In this document: positions 27,301 to 42,300 of the stretch, in pieces | Layout of the letters: each line of letters starts with the position of its first letter | How positions within the stretch are numbered: position 1 is the stretch's first letter | Assembly: GCA_977030845.1 (NCBI GenBank) | Contig: OZ365112.1 | Coordinates: 19,530,001 to 19,594,000, forward strand | DNA: 64,000 bases | Origin: Fimbriosthenelais zetlandica | Lineage: Eukaryota | Direction: 5' to 3' | Notes under the pieces: generated by a model | Told to the model about the DNA's origin: nothing | What the model saw: the letters and a program-made list of their open reading frames with translations, nothing else | Databases searched by the model: none | Translations under genes and position numbers: made by a program

Positions 27301-30300
27301 AAGTGGTTGTCTAGGAAGAAAGGCCTAAATAATTAAATAATTCTTTGTGAATATATATTCTTTGCGGACAAGTGGGATTTGACTTCATGTGAACCATCAC
27401 AATAGACAACAGAACAAATGAAGATGAAGTCATACCCTATAGACAAAAGTACCTACTAATAGATGATATTTAAAATAGTTTATCTATGGAAACTATTAGG
27501 CGCTAATTGCAGTGATTAGAGTAGGTCTAAGAGTGTTTCAGGGGTCGAGAGATACTGTACTTAGAAGATGGTTCAATTTTGGAGAAAGACTGGTATTTGG
27601 ATAATTGAAAGCGTGTATATTGGCAGTGTGTGAATATAAATGTCATTTGCCGCTATAACAGGCCTCGGGTTGGCGTTCTACAGGTGACGGGCAAAAGAAG
27701 ACCATATGACAGTCAACAAGACTGACCTCATCCAAGAGGACTTTCTGAGGAAGCCAAATCAACTGAACAAACCATGCATGAAACACATAACTGACGGGAT
27801 CTAAAACACAGAATCAAAACCAACAAACCTATCAGAGAAACAAACTTGTTTTTGAAACTTCATTTGAAACAGGGGACTTCATAATATGGCATATGCAAGC
27901 AAATGATTTTGAAGAATTCGGGTTGATTTTTCATCTACAGAAGCTCAAACATGTACTTGGCGCTCAAAGCAATGAACACAGATCGAGACTGAACAGAAGA
28001 ACGGGCCCTTACTAACCCTCATCCCATTAAAATTATATTTTTAACAATTACTGACTTTATACAGATTTTATAAATCATACATCTTGTCATGATTATTCCA
28101 TATTCCTTTATCAAAATCTCATATTAACTTCTCAGTTCTGATAAAAGACCATTTTGAAGAAAAATTGAAAGCAATGGCACAAAACGATGACAAAACGAAG
28201 GGCGTTGTATATACAAGACGAAAAGGTCAAGAACAAATAAAAGAAAAGTAACAAAGGAAGAAGAGGGTGCATGCATCTTGAATCATCATCATGTTGAGAT
28301 GCAAGTCTAAATACCCCAATCCTGAGAGGAGCTCGGCTTGGTTTGCATCTTATCGCCCTCGTAATAAGGTAAGTAGACATGTTGTTCCGGCAGAGGCTTG
28401 CCAAATAAGGGTGACGAGGGCAACAACATTTCGTCACCTAGGTAACGGGGGGCACCAACCATTATACATCACACACTCTCCAAATAGTTTCTATTATTTT
28501 CCATTAACTGTTACATTATATTTAACTGGCACAGTTATATATACTGTCATGTGAATTCTAGTTACTTTTTCTGTCATATTATTGCATAAACTAATTGCAG
28601 ATATAAATATGTTATTTAAAAAACATAATTTGATAATAAATTGAGTGAAGTAAGATATTTCAACTCCTTGATATGAGTAGAATATTACTACTCTATGATA
28701 TTTCCTCAATTTAAGGGCTCAGTAAAAACAGGCCATTCTTTGTTAGTATCAGCAGTCCAAATCTCACATAGGGTTATCTGGTAAAGATTCTTACTACAAA
28801 GCAGCTAAATTAGCTAATTAGCATGTGTCAATAATGCCAACAATGGCTGGGACAGGATTTCCAAAAGTATATTAAACTTTCAAACTCAAATCCAAGAAAA
28901 ATGACCACTGACTAAAACTGAAAAAATATTTCAGGGGGTCATTTGGAGTGGTGGGAACTGGGCTTGAAACATGTACACAAACACACAGGTCTAGATTAGT
29001 ACATGTTGGGAGGCTATGTTGGATTCGGAGTTAGGCTTGAGGACCATGGGAATAGTTATAGAACATATGTGGAGATACAGAACCTGTGAGAGCAGTAGAG
29101 GGGAATAGGTGGTGAGAAGTACATATGATATATACAATATATGGACATTATAACAATTGCCGCATCCATATATCATATCGATCTATGTACTCTAACCTAA
29201 AAGGAGGTCCACACAAATTAGCTTAGAGACTGGCATCGTCACATTGTGACATGTAAAACACAGAAAATACAGAAATAACAGATGTTCATTGGTAAATGTA
29301 TTAATCTACCTAACAAAGTTATCATTGATTTAGATGCAATAACAATAATTATGGTTAACGTATGGAAGTTCCTCAAGAAACGATACAATGGTAAGAAACT
29401 CTTCCATGCGATATTATCATCTTCAATCTTTTTCAAGCCAAACTTGGTATTATTATAATCATGGATCAGTTTTTTTAATGATACAAGAAACAACATGGAA
29501 AATAAAATAATGCGCATGCATTTAAACTTTTTCATAATATCACTCACAGCATTATTAGTTGAGAACAGCAACATGAAAATACCAAACACTGATGCATCAC
29601 AGCAGAGTGGCAACAGCAGTTACACAGATTTTGTATCTACTGTATGGCGAGTTCAAGAATTCCAAAACGTAGAAAGGACTTCGGGGAATCAAAATGGGCC
29701 TGTGGCCACCCTGCCTTCTGCAATGCATCAGTGTAGGACTATGTATGTTAAAATTCCTGGTTAGGGTTAAGATTTGGGTAATTAGAGTAGTTGAGGCAAA
29801 GATTTGCTTACCTCCCTCGTCCTCGGAGTCGGTCATGAGTGTCTCTTGCATGGTTTCTGGAGACACTACCTTGTACTTCTCTTCGGGAGGGGCCTGTTGG
29901 GGGGTCACCTCCGTGATGTGCTTCAACACCTCGACCACCGAGATGTAGCCAAGGCGCTGGGCAATCGAAAGAGGTGTCTGTCCCGTCTGAAGACAAGAAG
30001 AAACACATGATAAGGCCAAGCTTATATCCCACTGTGGACATAGTTAAATGTACTTTTATTTGATTTTGACTTTTAGGGTCGAAAAGTGAAGACTCACGTT
30101 GGTGACAGCGTTGGGTGAGGCCTTGTACTTAAGCAGGAGGTTGATTACAAGGACATGGCCCTGTTGTGCCGCCTGGTGGAGTGGCGTGTAACCGAGCTAC
30201 AAAAAAAAGAAAATATCAATGAATCATCATTTCTAACTCGAATTTAACCCTTTCCCCTTGAATTTCAGCATCTCTACGTCAAGTTATACCAAAGGTCATA

Positions 30301-33300
30301 GGTTGGAGGTCGTAGACCAACACGTGAGCTGACGGAGGTTTACCTTGGTGGTAGCGTTGACAGAAGCGTCATGTTCGAGTAGGAATCGTATCATATTTAT
30401 CTGTCCAAAGTGACAGGCAGTGTGGAGTGGGGTATAACCGGCCTTAGTCTGAGGATCGATGTCTGAGCCGTGCTTGACAAGGATCTCAGCTACAGGTACT
30501 TTGTCTTCTTGTGCCGCCAAGTGCATTGGTGTCAGTCCATTCTGTGCAGAGAAAAGAGACGATCATGAAACTCTTGTTGATTCCTTAGATTCTTGGGGGT
30601 ACATCATCGAGTACATGGTTAAATTCTAATAATTTCCCTATGAATTGATCTGATAAGTTTGGTAAGGGACCTACCTTAGCCTTACAGTTAACGTTGGCCT
30701 TGTGTTCTAGTAGGAGGGACACCATGTCGGTGTGACCCTCCTGTGAAGCCAGATGGAGTGGGGTGAAGCCGTTCTGCAAAGAAAATAAGTTCTCCTTAGC
30801 GTTTCCTTCTTATGGTTTTGCCAAATGGACTATTCTTTAACAACCTCAATCCTTAATCATATTCCGACTATTCTTACCTTGCTCTCGGCATCTGGCTTGG
30901 CACCATATTCCAGCAAAGTAGTTGCAATGTCCATTTGGTTTTTCTTGGCGGCAATGTGTAGAGGAGTATATCCGTTCTGAAGTGTAAAGTGATTGCGTTT
31001 TAAAGATTGAAAGAATCTATCAACCTCTTGGCAAGGGCTTTTTGATCTTGATTGATTAAATTACTTAGCTCTAGTGCTACTCACCTTTGCAGTGCAATGA
31101 GGAGAAGCCCCATTTTCTAGGAGGAGCAGTGCCACGTTGACATGATTGTAATGGGTAGCCACGTGGAGTGGGGTCAGACCGTTCTTGCCTTGTACATTGG
31201 GGTCAGCTTCTTTCTGGAGCAGTAGCTGCACCACCTTAATGTTACCGTACTTAGCCGCAATGTGCAGGGGTGTGAATCCCTTCTGTAAACACAAAATCCC
31301 AAAGAAAAGTTACAAACGAGTATGATCTAGATTTATTTTTAACTTTCGGATTTTAATAGGTAATAGAATAGGATCTTGGGATGGGTTTGGAGGATCAATG
31401 TCCCAAAGAGATCTGATGTACCCACCTTAGTAGTCAGGTTTTGGTTAGCACCGTGCTCTAGGAGTACCGCGGCCACCTCCTCGTGGCCCTCCTTGGCAGT
31501 GATGTGAAGCGGTGTGTAGTTGTCCTTGGTTGTAGCATCCGGCGAGGCGCCATGTTGGAGCAGCAGGACGACGATGTCAGTGTTACCGAGACGGGAGGCG
31601 ATGTGCAGTGGCGTCTGTTGCTCACGTGCTTTCGCGTCCACCTGGGCGCCATTGCGCAACAGAATACGAATGATATCGGTCTGATTGGCGCGGGCCGCAA
31701 GGTGGAGAGCCGTCTCGCCACGGACAGTGGGTGTGTCCGGGTTGGCGCTATGCTGGATTAGGTAGATGACGATGTTCATGTGGCCCATGAAGGAGGCCAC
31801 ATGCAGCGGGGTGAGGCCAGACTCAGTGGTGGCCTCAATGGATGCACCATACTTGAGGAGAAGCTCCACTACTTTAATGCGGTTTTTCTTGCAGGCAATG
31901 TGTAGAGGTGTAAAGCCATTCTGAAAAGCAAGGAATACTTCAGCAATTGAATTCATATTTGGGTAAAGTATAAACATGTTTAACATAATCACTTTATTGA
32001 TAGGACGTGAGAAGATAATAGCCAGTAGACTCACCAAAGCACGGGCGTTGACTTCACATTTACGGTCAAGTAGGAGCTTAGCTGTGCGCACGTTTCCACA
32101 GTGAGCTGCTACATGAAGTGGGGTCAGGTAGTCCACAGTCACGTCGTCGATGGGCGCTTTGTGGTAGAGAAGCAGGCGCGCGCAGTCAACGTGATCGCCC
32201 TGAGCTGCCATATGTAATGGGCTCAGTCCATTCTGTCAAATTATAACCATTGACAATGAAGAAATATATTTAAACATATTAACAAAAATAATTTTGGGTT
32301 TTTTTCTTGGAATCCTAATTTTAACTGTAGCTGATATTTACCTTTGTTTTGGCGTTGACCGGGGCACTTCTCTCCAACAGGATTTCTTCGACTGCATCAT
32401 GTCCACTACGTGCTGCGCAATGAAGAGGCGTCAGTCCGTCCTGTACAAAATCAATGTGAGGTTTAACAACTACCCCAGCAGAACTATGTCCAAGGTATAC
32501 TCTTTACATCCTTTTAAACACATAATTCATCATTGTGAACATTTGAGTATCAAAGCCTAAACCTACTCCTAAGAAATGTAGTTTCTTGGACAAGTTTTAT
32601 GAGCAAGTGCTTCTGAGAATATTTATTTCAAGGTGTCCCATAGATTTAGAAAAGTGCTCAAACAGGAAAATACAGCAAAAGCATAGTTTAGAATGACTGC
32701 ATATTTAGAGATCTCAAAATTCAGGAATTAAAAGGAATGGAAAATTTAAACTGTACAATTATGGTGGGTAGTCAGAAGTAGTGTCCGTACTTTACATCAA
32801 AAGGTGTTTTCAAAGAGACTTTCATAATAATTTTAAATAAAAAAGATGGGTGTTTAAAACACTGTGGTTGAAAATTGATTCAAAGCTACCCACAAAAATA
32901 ACACATGTAATGTATGGTGTCTGGCTAACGTCTAGCAGGTACCAAAACAGTTGGGAGGATTAGGATATCGGGCAGAGGGGAAAAGATTGCATTAAATCAT
33001 TTCAGAGTCAGATTCGAGAATATGGAGGAATTTATAAAATATGTGGAATCAATCATTTTTGAGATATTGTCCAGCAACCTTTTCACATATACCCTTCTCA
33101 TCAGAGATGAGACACCAACTGCAAAACGAAGCGTCATCGCTGCACTGTGAAAAGACATTGGACCCACGATTTAAGTTTAATGATTTGATCATTTTAAGGT
33201 GCCTTCTCTGGATACTGAAGGGGGAGAAGAAACAAGGGGCACATCTGAGGTAACAGTACAGATAGTTGTAGAATGCATGGTTTGCAGTGGTTTTTGAAGC

Positions 33301-36300
33301 AATGTTTCTAACAACGTAGAACACATAAGTACATATATGACAAGGGAACACCTTGACCTATCTGCATCTAAGAGTACACGAGAGCGACATACTACGAACG
33401 ATATCATCTACAGTTCTAAATGAGTGAGTATGGCTTTCGTCACGTCTAATAAAATATTTCTAGAAATTTTGACGTAATTTTACAGAGGTCAACATTATTT
33501 ATTTCATAAGTAAAAGTCAATTCCATTCTCATGGGTAACAACTCTGTAAAATTACGTAAAATTCAGATACACATTTTTACCATCAAGACTAAAATGTAGA
33601 CAATAATATTACAGGAGGTTCGAAAAAATTTAGCGATGCCAGTGGAGGAAAATATGTTATAAACATAAATATCCATATCTTGTATAAAACTGGCATCACT
33701 AGATTGTTTCAATAAGATATGGAATACAACAAGGTCAGGAATTGGAGAATGTGACATTAAAAGCATGAAGATGTTTGGTGAGGAGGAGTAGCACTTACAC
33801 GTGTGGAACAGCCGATGTTGGCCTCACTATCCAAGAGCAGGGTAACCATCTTTGTGCGTCCCCACTTACTCGACACGTGTAAGGGGGTGATCGCATTCTG
33901 TAAGAAAACATCAAATATGCTATCAGAAGCCAGTAATTAATAATAGAAACCACATAAATTTATTGATGTTTCCTATGGTAAAGCATATTACATGACAAAA
34001 TTATTTACCCTGGCCTTGAAGTTGACATCTGCTCCTTTCTCAATAAGGAGCCTGCCGACGTTCAGATTGCCATAGTGAGCTGCGATATGCAAGGGCGTGA
34101 AGCCACTCTGAAAAAAGATCCAGAGTAACGAAATCAGCAAGACTCTCAACAACCTAACAATTACCATTAGCAATCTGGAAAAAATGGTAGAGAACTCCCA
34201 AACATATTGCTCAGTGACAGATGATATATTATTCTTTCACTTGTATTGGGATTGTGTGATATGTATCAAATATTATTGTCTTGCATGCCTTTAGTATAGA
34301 AATATGAGCCACTTTATACCAGGTAAACATGTATAAGGAGAGTGAATATTGTAAAAATGGTGGAGAACCCGGGAAAAAAATTCAATGGTGTTTAGTGTCA
34401 ATAAGCATATAAATCCACTGACTATGGACAATCCCTTGTTTTTATGTTAATAAGATGCAAATTCAGGTGCAGGCACAATATAGCCTAAATTTGACTAAAG
34501 CCAAGGGCACGCGTGAGCAATATGGATTAAAAATTTCAAGCTCCAAATATACAATTCATACAGAATGAAGCTATCATCAAAGACGACTAACTGATTTTCC
34601 CAGGAAATCACAAACACCAACCTAACATATGGCAAAATGTGAAAATGATATGTGAACTGATAGGACACTACTCATGAGTAAGAACTTGCGAAATTTGAAA
34701 AGCATGAAATAAATATATGTTCCAGTTTTGAGTACCAGGTGATTTTTAATGCACTTCCCCGCAAGCCTATTTCAATGTATACCATGACGTTACTCATGTT
34801 CTATTTCTATCAATTTTTACTATCTAATATTTCTGATATGCAATAACGACATGATTGTGTCAATAACGTGTGATTACTTTTGACAGTTTTTGATTGTCAG
34901 CCATGGAACTGAAGAACAGCTACGAGAGCAAATAACAGTCCCTGAGTAAGTTACAAGTAAGCTATCATTTAACAGTCATATTAACTACTCTTTTATTCAT
35001 GTGTTGCCTCTGTCAAAACAGCCACACAACCAGACACCTATTATCAGAAGTCAAATTTTCGATCAAGCCAGACAGTCGGCTCTTCTAGGGCAAGACCCCC
35101 TCCCTCCTCCAGCCTCCCACCTACTCCCCCCTCCCAACACCAGTGGAACAGCCGGGCTGATCATACATTAACTGGTTGCTATGGCAACCGAGAAATGTAC
35201 CGGCTACAGTAGGGGCTACTGGTGCAATGCAGATGGTGGGAGGAGGCTGGGGAGATCCCATAGACTCAAACATAGGGGTCTGCCTGTTTTCCAACTTAGC
35301 TTCATTCTACAATTCTAAACTGCTTTTCATATTTTTCAGAAAAATGAAATAACTTAAAGAAAATATTAAAGGCTTTTTCGAAATAATTATTATAGCAATA
35401 AAGCATTCTGCTTTGAGAGATCAATGCCTCTCCTTGAAAATACAGGTACTGATTTCTTTTGAGACCTAACAATTAAAGAAATCAAAGATAGATGAAAAAT
35501 AGGTTATGAATATCTTTTCCTATGCTCTTTGGCTTTTGATTTATTCCATTTTTTCCCTCGGTGTAGACCTGCAGCTACTATTAACCTGAACCAAAACTTA
35601 GTACAGAAGCACCCACTAATACTCTGACATTTGTTGAGTTCATAGTCTCTAAACTAACGCCCTGGGATTTTGAAAACAACACTTTGCCAAAAGTTTGCAT
35701 ATTATAACCTGACTTTAGGAGTCCTGCTACGATTATTTATAGCTACCTTGATCATGCCTTAATTGCATGCACGCGGTTACAATGAACATGTCTAGCAAGT
35801 TATCTTTATCAAAGTTAGAAGATGCATGTCAACTATATATCATTCTGGTACGTCTAGACTGGCTTTATAGGAGGGGCTGCAAACTTGGGAAACTGCATCT
35901 AGCAAGATATGTTCTCAACAAAAAAAATTATCTCAATGAAACGATTGAAATTGCAAAGATTTGGAAATGACTGAGGGACAAAACCAAAACCATATTGAAA
36001 TTGTGTTGGTCAGAGGAAAATGCAGAACAATTTCCTGAATGACACACAAAAAGAAAAACGCTTAAATGATAACAGGAATTTGAACTGATCCAACTGAATA
36101 GAAGAAATCCATTTTGCTGGAGGGAAAAGGGTGATCATGTTCTAACAAAAAATGAAAGAACACGTCTTAGATGAAGAGATGCAACTGAAATGTTAATGCG
36201 ATAATTACACTTATCTAAAGAGATCCTACAGCCGTGCACTGACACACAAACACACAAAAACAGTCGATTCTGACATACAAAAATTTACACATGTACACAC

Positions 36301-39300
36301 AAAACAGAGCAAACATCATTGTCGAAAAAAATACACAACACACCACATGGAAGGACAGTTGACAGAGGCGTACAGATTATCATCATTCACTAGAAGCCAC
36401 TTTCTATAACATGTCTAGAATGTATGATATGAAAGTGTGTATACAAGGTAATGCATGTAGGTATATTGGTCATTCCATCTACTAATTAATGTACTATTAT
36501 ATACAGACTGTAGAGGAATTTTCTTGATTTCGGAATACAAGAGACCAGATTGTCTCAGCAAAGATCAGTGAAGGTGTTTTCGAAGTACCAGACTAAGAAT
36601 GGAAGTCATATAATGTACATAATCACATGGACTGACCAATATAATAATAACAGTGCTCTTTTATGATATATCTTTACATATATAGAGAGGATGGAATATA
36701 ATAAAAGAGGCGGTCCTGTGGTTAGCTACAGACCTTGGTTGTGTCATTGACTAAGCTGCCACTCTGCAAATAGGGACAAACCACACGGTCGAGGTCAAAG
36801 TTCAAGTCACTTCATGGCAACAACATCTAACTGAGAGAGAGGAGGGCATGATGCTCTTGTCCCCAAATGATGTGCAAGTCTTAATTAGAGCCATTAATAT
36901 ACCACTGAGAATAATATGGGCTGCGATAAGTCTTAAATCGAAAATGCACCAAAACATTCCATTTCAGAATCTTGGTAATGATGCACATTATCCTTCTTTT
37001 AATACCAACAGTCAACAAGGGACAGCACCCACCATAGGGGAGAAGAGCCATGTAAATATTATCTATTTCTCAAATATATCCTTTTTTCGTCCATGGAGAC
37101 AGGTAGAGAGAGTTTTCATTCTAGTAACTGCATAACCATAACGAGCAAGAGAAGATATTTAACATTAATAACGATATTAAGGACGCGACAAATGGAGGGC
37201 AATACTCTGTTGAGGGGAGGAGTATATAAATATGAGAATTATCACGGTGCATGGATGGAACGGGGCAACTGGAAAGGCAGTGTGGTTCTCAAGAGCAAGA
37301 GGATGAACAAGATTTAGTACTTATCATACACTAATGAAAACCATTTACTTAATTCTGAAAATTCTGAAGGGTATCAATCCAATGACTTCAATTATCTCAG
37401 ACCTTAGCTGAGTAAGCACCAAGACACATCAGATTATACGTGACACCCTACTAGTCCCACCTTCCAATGACTAACATCCCCTTTCAGCTAAGAACAATGA
37501 GCTACGCTCACCTTGGACGTGCCATCGACGTTGTGTTCATTTTGTAGCAGGAGCGTTGCAGCCTTGATGTCGTCCTTTTTGGCGGCGATGTGGAGAGCGG
37601 GCAGGCGAACCTTGCCTCGGGTGTCATTCTCCAGCAAGACCGCCACCACTTTATCGTGTCCTTGCTGCAATGCCACTGCCAAAGGAGTAAATCCGTCCTA
37701 GAAAATAGATAAAGTATATAATAGGTTACTAGTTGCAAAATATCAAAAAGCAATTGAGGGTGAAATGCAGGAGTGCCATAGGTAAATTAGTATTGGTTCT
37801 GCCAATAGAGCGATGCATATTCAAAGACTTCCTCCTTAGTTTTGAATACATGTATTTTTACCTATTTTAGTTAATTACAGTTAGGGTGACAAGCATAGAT
37901 TCTTACCTCCGTGGCCAAGCTCTGGCTAGCCCCGTTAGCCAAGAGAAACTTGACCACATCGGAGTGGTTCTCCTGTGCAGCCATATATAAAGGGGTGAAC
38001 CCATTCTGAAAAGTCAAAATTAACACGGTTAATACATGTCCATAAAGATGAAATCATATTTAAATGTAATTCCATAGAAACACGTATCCTTCAAAGTGAT
38101 TCATAAATGACGTTTTCCTACCTGTGATTGGACATTGACTTTGGCCCCCTGTTGCACCAGAATCTTGACAATTTCCTCCTGTCCAGCTAGGGAGGCTATA
38201 TGAAGGGCAGTATTTCCTTTCTGTAAGACAAAAAAAGGAAAATTATAATGATTGTACCTTCATTGCAATATGAACCACATACTAACATCCTTACTTTCTG
38301 TTTCCAACCCCACCCTTTATTTATTATTCTCAAAGATAAGTTGCTTTTATACATGTATTTTTAAAATATGTTCGTGATAAAAGAGTCCAACTTAAGAGAA
38401 AAAAAAACATTCATTGGAGACAGCAGACATAACAGACTGGCTGTACAGAGGGAGGGACAGATGCTCGGACTAGTATGTTAGACCAAGTGCAGGTGTTAGA
38501 TACTCGATAAAACACTCACACCATACCGCCTCAAAATCAATGATCAGATCATGTTGGCTTTCCCCACGATAACTCTATACAATATGAAGGCTTAAAATTT
38601 AATATATTGTCAACCACTAGTGATTGAAATCCCAATGTAACCTTTATACCATGTACGTATTGGAGCTTATTAGCTTGCTAAACTTAATAGCTTGCTTCCC
38701 TCTATATTAGTTTTAAATGTTATTAAATGATTCTTTAATATATATCATATAACGTAAACATGTATTACTGCAATACTTAAAAAAAATAAAAACATTGCTA
38801 ATACTCTGAAGATATTAATGAAAAGCCCGAGAAAGAAAAATATAATCTGAGAATGGGCGTATTAGCTGACTGTAAAATGTAGTGGGATAAAGGAATGACG
38901 TAGAAAAACCGAGATCGAGCTCTGGGATTGAACAGACTGAAATCATTTCATTGTTTGGCAAGCTAGATTGGAATAAACCCATACTAAACAAAAACCAACA
39001 GTGTTCACATAGATATTCAATCCCGCATGGTCAGACTGAAGGATTTTTAGCAGTCTGCAGAATGTGCTGACTTGGCACAGGAAAAAAGGTAGTCATATAT
39101 TATGAGAAGAGGAGAGGGCGGATTTAAAATCTGTACAGTGAAAATATCCACTCTCCTCCCTCACTGTAATGAAGAATTCCTAATAGGTGATCAATATTTA
39201 TACACACACGTTTACACTCCCATCTGATGGAGAAAAAAGCCACTCTATTTCGGACCTGGAATTGGTGCCAAATTCACTAGGTAATTCAATACTTAATGAA

Positions 39301-42300
39301 ATTAGGCGTTAGCTGTTCGTAAACTTGTTCAAATCATCAAGAGGACTGAGTGAAGGCACCGGAGCTTTTTTTAGTTGCATAACATACATCATAAACACTG
39401 GATTTATTTTCTAAGTACTGTAATATTAAAAAAGGGACAGAAACATGTGTGAACATTGGGAAGCTATGGCATCGATGCTGACAGGGACTTCATACGTGTT
39501 GTTATAACACCAAACACAGAGACTAACACTAACTGTCACGAGCATAAAATGTCACCTCACACAGAATCCCATGTCCTCATACTACATAACTGCCATCTTT
39601 CACCATCCTTTATATATCCACAGCGACATAGACTTCATTTCAAGCCATCAACCATATATCACCCAAGGAACCCTTGAACACCACTCCACCTTTTGCTATT
39701 TTGTTTCTTTTATTTTCGTCGAATAAGCAAAGATAATAAAGCATTTATTTTGGAATAACCGATTGGTAATTAGCTGCTAATTAATTGGTATTATTGAGGT
39801 TTTCTTACCTTAGTTGCTGCGTCTACATTGGCCCCTCGTTTCAATAGTTCTGTGACAATGTTAACATGCCCTTCTTTAGACGCAAGGTGGAGAGCATTCA
39901 ATCCATTCTGAAAGGCACAAAAGCAAGTACGGTTATTTACCATTGAAAACTAATAAAATTCTCCATGATATATTTAAGAAATTATTTCAATTGGTAATAT
40001 AAAAGTCCTGTAAATAATATTTTATAGAAATTGGGCATAGTATGATATTGCAATATACAACATATTCTCTAAAGAGTCCCTATGGCCTTCAATTTCTTTT
40101 AGTGAAGGCACATTAATGTCCCACTGTCCACATTATTAATTGGTACACAATGAATGGTAAAGATACAAATGGTTGAAGGGAAAGTCATAAGCATGCATCA
40201 GTAGAGGAGGTGTGGCATGTAACATTGATGTATGGGCTATGGGTGGGTTTAGCTATGTCAGATTCAGTGTAAAGGTGACTAAGATCAGGTCAGTTTGTTT
40301 ATAAATAACCCAGAGATGGAGCTACCCACAAAACTGCTCCCATAACTCGCTATGTAGGCTGCAGCAGAGAGAGAGAGTGTGTGGATGTTCACACGTTTCT
40401 TCACCACTTGGTGATGGCGGGGCAGCTTTTAAAAATAATTACTGTATCACCAGCTCACAACAGATTCATTCATGACATTTTTTCGAGTGCCACTACATTT
40501 TCCCCCACATAAAGGTCATGTTCATTGAATATTATGCCTATGAGGTCAGCGTAAAGGCTTTGAAACCGATACTGAACATGGTGGCAACACATTGTCATCG
40601 GGGAAATACATGCTAGAGAAAAAAAGTCATAATCTCTTCCAGCTACCACCTAATCTGGGGATTGGGAAATCATGAACATTTTCTAGAAATCAATTGGATA
40701 CCGACATAAATGTTCTACTTCAACAGAATTGAATTGGAGGGCGATGCCCAAATAAATGTCCTACCTCATTTAATAGAATTCAATTGGAGGGCGTTTTTGA
40801 TCACGATCCATTGTGATTCTACATGTTTTGTGTTAATATTCAAGTGATTAGGCCAGTTGTAGAATAGCAGTTGTCAGATGTGATATAACCACACATTGAC
40901 AAGCCACCACCTTTCTTAGGATGATCAGAATCATTGTCTTTCCAGCTTCGATCTAATCATAGATCTATGATCTAATCCTACAAACCCGGGTAGCCTCACT
41001 AGGTTGTATGAGTACATGTTTGTCAATCATGTCTCACACCAAGCCGAACACCATGTCTGTCGTGGCTTCAAACAACTGCCCCCTATAGTGTTGATAAGTT
41101 TGTCACTTATGTCATTTTGCTCGAACTTTTCTTGCAAAACTGCTTCCATTATCCGTATCTACTTTTTCTCCCATGCCGGGTTGTTTTGCTTCATATCCGT
41201 CTTCTGCGTGCCTTATTGCCGCAGCATGTTGTAGATTACCACAAACTTCAGCACATTTGGACTGAAATAAATGTTCCGTGCTTTTGTAATATTTCCAATC
41301 TACTTCAATTGAACATGGGTACATGTTTGGTACTTTTGTGTGATTGAAAAGCCAGACCGTCCTCGATTGACACTGAATAAGCCGCTTCCAGGGAAATCCC
41401 CTCAGGCAGTAGGTGAAGTTCAGTGGTTGAATATCTCTTGTCATCGATTATAATCGCGTTTCCGCTTAGTCGAGAATTGTTACCACTTGCTTTGGCCACT
41501 CTATGAATATCTCTCATGTCTCTTCTGAAAGGTCGCCTTTTGATAGATCTTCATTAATATATGTGTGCCCCCATTTCCCCATGCCTTTCAAGTTTTTAAC
41601 TGATTTGAAGACGGTGGCTTTCAGATCGGGCGACTTCAATCGGATTAATACCGGTCGGTGTTTGTTTGGTAGCTTTTGTCATAGCCTGATATTGCAATAA
41701 CATGTTCTGCCCCAATGTCATTGACAAATTCACATACTTTTCACATACCTTCCCCTTCTCCCATGCCTTCTACTATTAAATTGGGTTTTTTCTTTTCATT
41801 TTCCAAAGCAATGATTCTTTTCTCGTTTTCTAAGTTTTTGCTCGCAAGTTATGAGTTTTTCGGGGGTGGGGGATGACACATAGATCATTAAAATTTCAAC
41901 CGAAAAGCATTCACATTTAATGTTAATTCATGTCATCATAATCCGAACATCTCAGGGATCCAAGGAAGTTGATCCAAGAGTTGATAAAGATGGATAAGGC
42001 AGTTTGAATCGTGAACGACGCCTCTGAATGTTTCACTTGAAAGGTTTTAAAGGGGTACTTTATGGAACCAGTGTGCAATGTGGACAGGCAGAGGGGTGCT
42101 AAGGCTATGGTACTTTTTTCATACACTTCTCCTCCTACTCCCTTTCACTGAGAACTCGTCTCCACTCAGCCCCTGAGTTGCTCACATCTCCTGACCTATA
42201 TCTTCCCACGCTTGTTTTTATCTAAACCACCTGCTCCTGAGGGTAAACATTACTATAGAATATGTCCCATATATGTATAGAAACCATATTACCAACAGGG

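What the first reader, a model, noticed from the sequence alone, without database searches (positions are those of the whole stretch)
41010..41830. Intronic relic of a retrotransposon ORF1-like protein fused to a NADAR domain
Seen: in the intron after the repeat-1 exon, six short minus-strand frames join via frameshifts into one colinear protein. It has a coiled-coil end with NLIVEG, an RRM-like [18 protein letters not shown], a [11 protein letters not shown] segment, then NADAR-type motifs in the right order (N.YP, EHLFQ, A..I..A....EAK, KF.QN, EA.D..(W/F)G). Established: the first block is typical of ORF1 of non-LTR elements (CR1/L2/L1-like). NADAR/YbiA enzymes are N-glycosidases that remove ADP-ribose from guanine in DNA (antitoxin of DarT1) or cleave damaged riboflavin intermediates. 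Inference: a mobile element family carrying its own nucleic-acid de-ADP-ribosylase, perhaps as counter-defence against host ADP-ribosylation. I saw no ORF2 (EN/RT) beside it, so this copy is truncated or the family is non-autonomous.
Basis: partly seen in the sequence, partly recalled or inferred. Interest (0 to 1): 0.75.

Follow-up and report, generated by a model that had tools for sequence, protein, structure and literature searches.

The report
Dead LINE copy with ORF1-NADAR fusion
The stretch is a broken, truncated copy of a jumping gene (a LINE retrotransposon) whose RNA-coating protein is fused to a NADAR enzyme domain, a type that strips ADP-ribose from DNA and RNA bases. The copy is dead, but intact relatives are abundant in this genome, and the fusion has been noted only once in the literature and never tested.

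Summary
Window 40793-41859 (minus strand) is a decayed fragment of a non-LTR retrotransposon. It holds ORF1 residues ~83-373 and ~70 residues of the ORF2 endonuclease. Relative to the closest copy it has three in-frame stops, about eight frameshifting gaps and ~884 bp missing.

That closest copy, on contig C39, has both frames open:
- ORF1 is 411 aa: coiled coil, then an L1-type RRM/CTD, then NADAR (Pfam E 3.8e-26).
- ORF2 is 963 aa: endonuclease plus reverse transcriptase, followed by an (AAAT)n tail.

A profile of the ORF1 family matches solved NADAR/YbiA structures (E 1e-21) and human L1 ORF1p (E 5e-11). A confident model (pLDDT 89) agrees. The genome holds at least 150 NADAR matches above Pfam's cut-off, nearly all inside 400-750 aa open frames. 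In 10 of 12 distant copies examined, a homologous ORF2 follows. Both catalytic glutamates are invariant in 36 of 36 diverse copies.

Its "no ORF2" is wrong: a remnant lies at 40793-41037.

The fusion was noted in passing for oyster Tx1 LINEs (PMC12477816), and this scan found it twice before elsewhere in this genome. A role as a de-ADP-ribosylase acting on the element's nucleic acids is inference only.

The parts
41038..41859 (-). Decayed ORF1 fragment, equivalent to residues ~83-373 of the open sister ORF1. It covers the end of the coiled coil, the RRM (NLIVEG ... RPVLIRLK ... YINEDL), the CTD-like hairpin ([11 protein letters not shown]) and most of the NADAR domain up to [11 protein letters not shown].
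   Evidence: blastn gives 86% identity to G000:C39. tblastn gives E 6e-63. Breaks are listed. Pfam NADAR is E 0.014 on piece 41115-41447 and E 3.8e-26 on the open sister ORF1.
41037..41038 (-). Junction where ~884 bp present in the sister copy are missing: the last ~40 residues of NADAR, the ORF1 stop, the inter-ORF spacer and the first ~60 codons of ORF2.
   Evidence: The two blastn blocks are adjacent in the window but 884 bp apart in the C39 copy.
40793..41037 (-). Remnant of the ORF2 AP-endonuclease domain (about residues 62-131 of the sister ORF2), with frame breaks.
   Evidence: blastn gives 82% identity to the C39 ORF2 5' part. tblastn gives E 1.5e-11. The sister ORF2 hits Exo_endo_phos_2 at E 1.5e-8 and RVT_1 at E 2e-38.
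40697..40793 (.). About two units of an unrelated 46-bp tandem-repeat family that abuts the 3' break of the LINE fragment. It is not part of the element but marks its boundary.
   Evidence: There are many genomic matches in arrays. blastn to L047 and TRF give period 46 and 15.5 copies. There is no match to the C39 element.

Best explanation
Window 40793-41859 (minus strand, same orientation as the host ankyrin gene whose intron it sits in) is a dead fragment of an autonomous APE-type non-LTR retrotransposon. It is 5'-truncated, internally deleted and cut off at the 3' side. In open members of the family, ORF1 encodes a long coiled coil, an L1-type RRM and part of the L1 CTD, fused at the C-terminus to a YbiA-family NADAR domain. 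ORF2 encodes an endonuclease and a reverse transcriptase. The window copy does nothing now. For live elements the inferred mechanism is as follows. ORF1p multimerises through the coiled coil and coats the element's RNA. This places a catalytically competent NADAR on the ribonucleoprotein particle. There it hydrolyses base-linked ADP-ribose (on G or C) from the element's RNA, cDNA or target DNA. That would protect retrotransposition from nucleic-acid ADP-ribosylation by host or microbial transferases. The identity and architecture are shown. The enzymatic activity, its substrate and the counter-defence role are inferred; I put the counter-defence role at about 0.3-0.35.
For: - Three DNA-level copies exist, and the C39 copy has both ORFs open.
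- Pfam on the C39 copy: NADAR E 3.8e-26 on ORF1; RVT_1 E 2e-38 and Exo_endo_phos_2 E 1.5e-8 on ORF2.
- The C39 copy ends in an (AAAT)n 3' tail.
- The ORF1 family profile against PDB sequences hits NADAR 8bau at E 1.6e-21, YbiA 2b3w at E 2.3e-20 and human L1 ORF1p 2ykp at E 5e-11.
- The AlphaFold model has pLDDT 89.2: helix 12-103, an RRM, a CTD-like hairpin and a NADAR fold.
- Foldseek on that model gives 8bau at TM 0.73 / rmsd 2.3 Å and the L1 ORF1p trimer at E 1.8e-6.
- The ORF1 query gave 102 scored matches among 561 candidates. Pfam NADAR gave 152 matches over its cut-off among 483 candidates, mostly in open 400-750 aa frames.
- A homologous ORF2 lies downstream in 10 of 12 distant copies.
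- ORF1 and ORF2 identities co-vary, rho 0.56.
- Residues mapped from PMC11543638 onto 36 copies: the E43 and E125 equivalents are kept in 36/36, D130 in 34/36 and W89 in 34/36.
- NADARs reverse G-ADPr on DNA and RNA and C-ADPr (PMC11543638, PMC11833690, PMC12945103).
- Phages carry orphan NADARs as counter-defence (PMC11825919).
Against: - The window copy alone does not reach Pfam's NADAR cut-off (16 bits against 35.1) and lacks the last ~40 residues of the domain.
- The lysine equivalent to K50, essential in E. coli C7 NADAR, is not fixed. K/R sits one position earlier in 16/36 copies and at the same position in only 9/36. The substrate or activity may therefore differ.
- Pfam's L1 ORF1 model did not hit the single sequence at E <= 1.
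- No DarT or ADPrib_exo_Tox homologue was found in this genome, though the controls were silent too.
- No RNA or DNA sequencing run could be listed, so expression is unknown.
- The LINE clade (Tx1, L1 or another) could not be assigned with these tools.
Confidence: 0.88

Rival explanations
1. The NADAR domain in these ORF1 proteins is catalytically active but is not a counter-defence. It might act on another N-glycosidic substrate, such as a small-molecule NAD/ADP-ribose derivative or a damaged nucleotide (as YbiA does on riboflavin intermediates). Or it might serve RNA processing of the element's transcript, as suggested for NADARs of RNA viruses.
For: E. coli YbiA is an N-glycosidase on riboflavin intermediates, and the roles of NADARs outside DarT operons are unknown (PMC11125620, PMC11543638). 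PMC12477816 proposes RNA processing. The K50-equivalent lysine varies. No nucleic-acid ADP-ribosyltransferase was found in the genome (both inconclusive).
Against: Every NADAR class tested so far, including YbiA-type and a sponge NADAR, hydrolyses G-ADPr on DNA or RNA (PMC11125620, PMC11833690, PMC12945103). Fusion to an RNA-binding ORF1p points to a nucleic-acid substrate.
Confidence: 0.3
2. The NADAR module is a non-catalytic structural or nucleic-acid-binding replacement for the C-terminal part of the L1-type CTD.
For: It sits where the L1 CTD helices would be (model). K50 is not conserved.
Against: Both glutamates are 36/36. D130, W89, the basic R93 position and the aromatic W133 position are kept across copies only 19-41% identical in the seven-element pairwise comparison. 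That pattern is expected for an active site under selection.
Confidence: 0.07
3. The window stretch is a processed pseudogene or exon relic of a host NADAR gene rather than a transposon fragment.
For: It lies in an intron in sense orientation, lacks a 3' tail and target-site duplications, and only three copies match at the DNA level.
Against: The same stretch continues into an EN remnant colinear with a sister element that has ORF2 and a 3' tail. More than 100 ORF1-NADAR copies have linked EN-RT ORFs.
Confidence: 0.02

Closest known systems
ORF1 proteins of Tx1 LINEs of the Pacific oyster (Repbase), noted to contain YbiA-family NADAR domains (PMC12477816, Genome Biol 2025)
   Same: A LINE ORF1 protein carrying a YbiA-family NADAR domain in a marine or aquatic invertebrate. 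Its function is unknown, and that paper speculates on RNA processing.
   Different: This is a different genome. ESM Atlas neighbours are mostly annelid, but the organism was not identified. I could not test whether this element belongs to the Tx1 clade. ORF2 here is only ~960 aa, and tails are (AAAT)n or poly(A). The window copy is a dead fragment.
Human/mouse LINE-1 ORF1p (coiled coil-RRM-CTD trimer; PDB 2ykp, 2yko, 2ldy, 2w7a)
   Same: N-terminal coiled coil followed by a non-canonical RRM and the first helix and hairpin of the CTD. The profile E-value is 5e-11 and Foldseek gives E 1.8e-6.
   Different: The C-terminal part of the CTD is followed or replaced by a ~160-aa NADAR enzyme domain. 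The Pfam L1 ORF1 model does not hit the single sequence. The oligomeric state was not tested.
Stand-alone NADAR/YbiA hydrolases (P. nicotianae NADAR 8bau; E. coli YbiA 2b3w) and phage T4 orphan NADAR counter-defence (PMC11543638, PMC11125620, PMC11825919)
   Same: The same fold (TM 0.73-0.74), the YbiA-type glutamate in the last strand, and the ADP-ribose-contacting residues largely kept. The phage case is a precedent for a mobile element carrying a NADAR against nucleic-acid ADP-ribosylation.
   Different: Here the domain is fused to a retrotransposon RNA-binding protein in an animal genome. The K50 lysine is not fixed. No partner transferase is known.
Esterase-containing ORF1p of CR1/L2-like LINEs (ZfL2-1; PMC3905857)
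   Same: A LINE ORF1p consisting of a coiled coil plus an accessory hydrolase domain.
   Different: The enzyme is different: an SGNH esterase acting on lipids. Esterase ORF1ps never combine with an RRM according to that paper, whereas here the enzyme domain and the RRM coexist in one protein.
Gypsy LTR retrotransposons of Ectocarpus with a NADAR domain at the N-terminus of Pol (PMC12477816)
   Same: An independent capture of a YbiA-family NADAR by a retroelement.
   Different: A different element class, a different host protein (Pol rather than ORF1) and a different kingdom.

Membership tests
NADAR superfamily, YbiA family (Pfam PF08719) | Sequence match to PF08719 above the gathering score (35.1 bits) | tested here: met
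   The open sister ORF1 scores 92.7 bits, E 3.8e-26. 152 genomic matches exceed the cut-off. The window's own largest piece reaches only 16.1 bits because it is broken and truncated.
NADAR superfamily, YbiA family (Pfam PF08719) | YbiA fold | tested here: met
   The model has pLDDT 89. Foldseek gives 8bau at TM 0.73 / rmsd 2.3 Å and 2b3w at TM 0.74.
NADAR superfamily, YbiA family (Pfam PF08719) | Glutamate in the last strand (E125 of P. nicotianae NADAR), which defines the YbiA family, plus the E43 equivalent | tested here: met
   Both are E in 36/36 aligned LINE ORF1 copies (mapping from the alignment and PMC11543638). The window relic still reads STEHLFQ and LFEATTD.
NADAR superfamily, YbiA family (Pfam PF08719) | Phosphate-coordinating lysine (K50 of P. 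nicotianae, K95 of E. coli C7) | tested here: inconclusive
   K/R is at the aligned position in 9/36 copies and one residue earlier in 16/36.
NADAR superfamily, YbiA family (Pfam PF08719) | Hydrolysis of base-linked ADP-ribose | not testable with these tools
   This needs a biochemical assay.
L1-type ORF1p (coiled coil-RRM-CTD) | N-terminal coiled coil followed by an RRM homologous to L1 ORF1p | tested here: met
   The profile matches 2ykp at E 5e-11 over coiled coil + RRM + CTD start. The model has helix 12-103 and a beta-alpha-beta-beta-alpha-beta unit. Foldseek matches 2yko at E 1.8e-6 and 2w7a at TM 0.65.
L1-type ORF1p (coiled coil-RRM-CTD) | Match to the Pfam L1 ORF1 family model | tested here: not met
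   No L1 ORF1 (Transposase_22) model was listed at E <= 1 for the single open ORF1. Homology is seen only with the family profile and the fold.
Autonomous APE-type non-LTR retrotransposon | ORF2 with an AP-endonuclease and a reverse transcriptase downstream of ORF1 | tested here: met
   The sister copy has a 963-aa ORF2 with RVT_1 E 2e-38 and Exo_endo_phos_2 E 1.5e-8. 10 of 12 distant copies have a homologous ORF2. The window keeps only a 245-bp EN remnant.
Autonomous APE-type non-LTR retrotransposon | A-rich or microsatellite 3' tail and target-site duplications | tested here: inconclusive
   Sister copies show (AAAT)n or poly(A) tails. Target-site duplications were not examined. The window copy has lost its 3' end.
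Tx1 clade of LINEs (the clade named in PMC12477816) | RT phylogeny placing ORF2 within Tx1 | not testable with these tools
   No reference set of classified LINE RTs was on hand. The word search returned only unnamed ENA proteins. PDB comparison (L1 ORF2p 6e-17, R2 4e-12) does not resolve clades.

The most novel reading that the evidence does not exclude
LINE-borne NADAR is an active base-ADP-ribose hydrolase that rides on the ORF1p-RNA particle. It erases guanine/cytosine ADP-ribosylation placed on retrotransposition intermediates by host or microbial pierisin/CARP-1-type transferases. That would be a eukaryotic transposon counter-defence enzyme analogous to the orphan NADARs of T4-like phages. 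A corollary is that much of what is listed as 'metazoan NADAR genes' is retrotransposon ORF1.
Probability: 0.3. Interest if true: 0.8.

Novelty: new member of a known kind. Interest (0 to 1): 0.42.

Why it matters
The window copy itself is junk DNA in an ankyrin intron. The family behind it matters for three reasons:
- An enzyme class now known to reverse ADP-ribosylation of DNA and RNA bases has been carried and kept catalytically intact by an old, diverse and recently active LINE group, in hundreds of copies.
- This makes testable whether nucleic-acid ADP-ribosylation acts on retroelements in animals.
- It warns that NADAR "genes" counted in invertebrate genomes may largely be transposon ORF1s.

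Tried and rejected
- Host-pseudogene reading: rejected on copy number and ORF2 linkage.
- Pfam on the window's pieces alone: only a sub-threshold NADAR hit and chance hits (SEHBP, DUF6541), which I disregarded.
- Partner transferases in the genome: PF03496 (ADPrib_exo_Tox) and PF14487 (DarT) gave no match. The tool's control genomes did not ring either, so this says nothing.
- LINE clade assignment: the ORF2 word search returned 4358 unnamed ENA proteins. PF28493, seen on some of them, is not in the local Pfam copy. PDB hits do not resolve clades. From memory, the RT motifs look Jockey/CR1-like; this is a lead only and is not used.
- Origin of the NADAR module: the word search with the NADAR domain alone gave 5 unnamed ENA proteins at 44-48% identity, so no stand-alone donor was identified. 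I did not run the big representative search because the family scans had already settled the protein's identity.
- Expression: no sequencing run was listed.
Twelve others were obtained.
Only natural open frames were used.

Full report
**What is in the window**

On the minus strand between 41859 and 41038, stop-free pieces in three frames follow one another colinearly. They read ...[14 protein letters not shown]......[25 protein letters not shown]...YINEDL......[11 protein letters not shown]...AFQSH......NMYPCSIEV...STEHLFQ...EAK......KFEQND... and ...[11 protein letters not shown]....

The largest piece alone gives only a sub-threshold Pfam NADAR hit (E 0.014, 16 bits against a cut-off of 35.1). 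The case therefore rests on relatives.

**Relatives in the same genome**

A DNA search of the window's own genome (447 Mb in 79 contigs) finds two other copies at 86-88% identity.

The copy on contig C39 carries an uninterrupted 411-codon frame colinear with the window's pieces. That frame hits Pfam NADAR at E 3.8e-26, 92.7 bits. About 600 bp downstream lies an open 963-codon ORF2. It has Exo_endo_phos_2 (E 1.5e-8) and RVT_1 (E 2e-38). A short 3' UTR and an (AAAT)n tail follow. This is a complete bicistronic APE-type non-LTR retrotransposon.

**Anatomy of the window copy**

blastn and tblastn against the C39 element give these correspondences:
- Window 41038-41859 corresponds to ORF1 residues ~83-373 (E 6e-63).
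- Window 40793-41037 corresponds to ORF2 residues ~62-131, in the endonuclease (82% DNA identity, E 1.5e-11).
- About 884 bp between these two blocks are missing in the window. They would hold the end of NADAR, the ORF1 stop, the spacer and the start of ORF2.

A base-level alignment shows 92.6% identity in aligned columns. There are 12 gaps, of which about eight shift the frame, and three in-frame stops at 41851, 41681 and 41161.

Nothing more of ORF2 exists elsewhere in the window. At 40697-40793 the fragment abuts about two units of an unrelated 46-bp tandem-repeat family. Upstream of 41859 the sequence is unique in the genome.

The copy is therefore 5'-truncated, internally deleted and cut at its 3' side. 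It is dead.

The host ankyrin gene runs on the minus strand, with ANK exons from 38217 down to 30193. The relic is therefore in sense orientation within an intron.

**What the ORF1 protein is**

An alignment of 12 open ORF1s from this genome and 7 proteins from other public assemblies (A1) was turned into a profile and compared with PDB sequences. It hits:
- P. nicotianae NADAR 8bau at E 1.6e-21
- E. coli YbiA 2b3w at E 2.3e-20
- human LINE-1 ORF1p 2ykp/2yko at E 5e-11, spanning coiled coil, RRM and the start of the CTD
- 2ldy, the L1 ORF1p RRM-CTD solution structure, at E 3e-4

An AlphaFold model of the natural C39 ORF1 is confident (pLDDT 89.2, pTM 0.68). It shows these elements in order:
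- a helix at residues 12-103
- a beta-alpha-beta-beta-alpha-beta RRM at residues 108-192
- a helix plus three-stranded hairpin at residues 196-233 (the [11 protein letters not shown] segment)
- a NADAR fold at residues 252-408

Foldseek returns 8bau (TM 0.73, rmsd 2.3 Å, E 3.9e-9), YbiA (TM 0.74) and the human L1 ORF1p trimer (E 1.8e-6), followed by generic RRMs. ORF1p is therefore an L1-type coiled coil-RRM-partial-CTD protein with a C-terminal YbiA-family NADAR.

**How common and how old**

The ORF1 query finds 102 scored matches among 561 candidates in this genome. Most lie in open frames of 400-670 aa at 25-50% identity. Pfam NADAR finds 152 matches above its cut-off among 483 candidates, nearly all as full-length single-exon matches inside open frames of 400-750 aa.

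Of 12 distant copies fetched with flanks, 10 have a homologous ORF2 downstream, and several are open over ~960-980 aa. Between seven elements, ORF1 identity (19-41%) and ORF2 identity (27-45%) co-vary (Spearman 0.56). This fits an old module inherited together with the RT.

Several subfamilies have copies with identical scores and 608-aa open frames, which suggests recent activity. Outside this genome, the word search finds ORF1-NADAR proteins of 360-490 aa in other assemblies. The ESM Atlas neighbours are NADAR clusters of 415-489 aa, with annelids the commonest recorded taxon.

**Is the NADAR likely active?**

I mapped the residues that contact ADP-ribose in P. nicotianae NADAR, and that were mutated in E. 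coli C7 NADAR (PMC11543638, section read), through the HMMER alignment onto 36 diverse ORF1 copies. The results are:
- E43 equivalent: 36/36
- E125 equivalent (the YbiA-family glutamate): 36/36
- D130: 34/36
- W89: 34/36
- R93: K or R in 31/36
- W133: aromatic in 36/36
- K75: K in 26/36
- K50 (the essential lysine): not fixed, with K/R at the aligned position in 9/36 and one residue earlier in 16/36

The two glutamates are preserved across copies only 19-41% identical in the seven-element comparison. That argues for a selected catalytic site. The lysine variation leaves room for a shifted substrate.

**How it most likely works**

Shown here: the architecture, the abundance, the ORF2 linkage and the conserved active-site residues.

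Established elsewhere:
- L1 ORF1p trimers coat their own RNA.
- NADARs of all tested classes remove ADP-ribose from guanine in DNA and RNA and from cytosine, but not from phosphate ends (PMC11543638, PMC11125620, PMC11833690, PMC12945103).
- T4-like phages use orphan NADARs against DarT1 (PMC11825919).
- CARP-1/pierisin-type transferases occur in bivalves and other invertebrates (PMC12945103).

Inferred: in live elements the ORF1p-tethered NADAR cleans base-linked ADP-ribose from the element's RNA, cDNA or target DNA.

I could not support the counter-defence part. Searches for DarT and exotoxin-type transferases in the genome were blank, and so were their controls. No sequencing runs were listed. 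I give this role about 0.3-0.35. A different catalytic role gets about 0.3, and a purely structural role below 0.1.

**Comparison with what is known**

One paper notes that ORF1 proteins of several Tx1 LINE families of the Pacific oyster in Repbase appear to contain YbiA-family NADAR domains. It also reports that an Ectocarpus Gypsy lineage carries one in Pol (PMC12477816). A full-text search found no other paper linking NADAR or YbiA with LINE ORF1.

The NADAR biochemistry papers treat metazoan NADARs as host genes. The nearest functional analogue among ORF1 proteins is the esterase ORF1p of CR1/L2-like LINEs. According to its authors that type never co-occurs with an RRM (PMC3905857). Here the enzyme domain and the RRM coexist.

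I could not place ORF2 in a LINE clade. There is no classified reference set, and the word search returned only unnamed hits. Membership in Tx1 is therefore untested.

**Earlier notes of this scan**

Two other windows of the same genome were already reported with the same reading (s1-210701, s1-223611). My results agree with them independently.

**Limits**

All protein analyses used natural open frames by reference.

**Verdict**

The window item is an ordinary dead transposon fragment. The family it belongs to is a little-known and functionally untested LINE type that deserves a biochemical test.

Noticed in passing
window 40697-40793; L047:203-913: About two units of a 46-bp tandem repeat abut the 3' break of the LINE relic. 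The same 46-bp unit forms arrays at many loci, for example 15.5 copies at G000:C13:35712402-35713112.
   Followed up: partly
G000:C14:1105826-1132436: Four NADAR matches spaced ~8744 bp apart (1105826, 1114570, 1123314, 1132056). This looks like a tandem array of 8.7-kb units, each holding an ORF1-NADAR.
   Followed up: no
G000:C1:2009490, C1:47882640, C1:66878223, C30:687956, C1:69325845: ORF1-NADAR copies with identical or near-identical scores, most with 608-aa open frames. This suggests a recently active subfamily.
   Followed up: no
L004:5753-5800; L039 and L044 downstream of ORF2: 3' tails differ among lineages of this LINE group: (AAAT)n in the C39 copy, and poly(A) runs of 31 and 11 A in two distant lineages.
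   Followed up: partly
window 30193-38217, minus strand: ANK-repeat exons of the host ankyrin gene run on the minus strand, so the LINE relic is in sense orientation within its intron.
   Followed up: partly
L005:1501-2733:- (C39 ORF1): The open 411-codon frame has no ATG before residue 72 and starts right after a stop. This otherwise open copy may itself lack its true ORF1 start: relatives have 60-200 more N-terminal residues.
   Followed up: no
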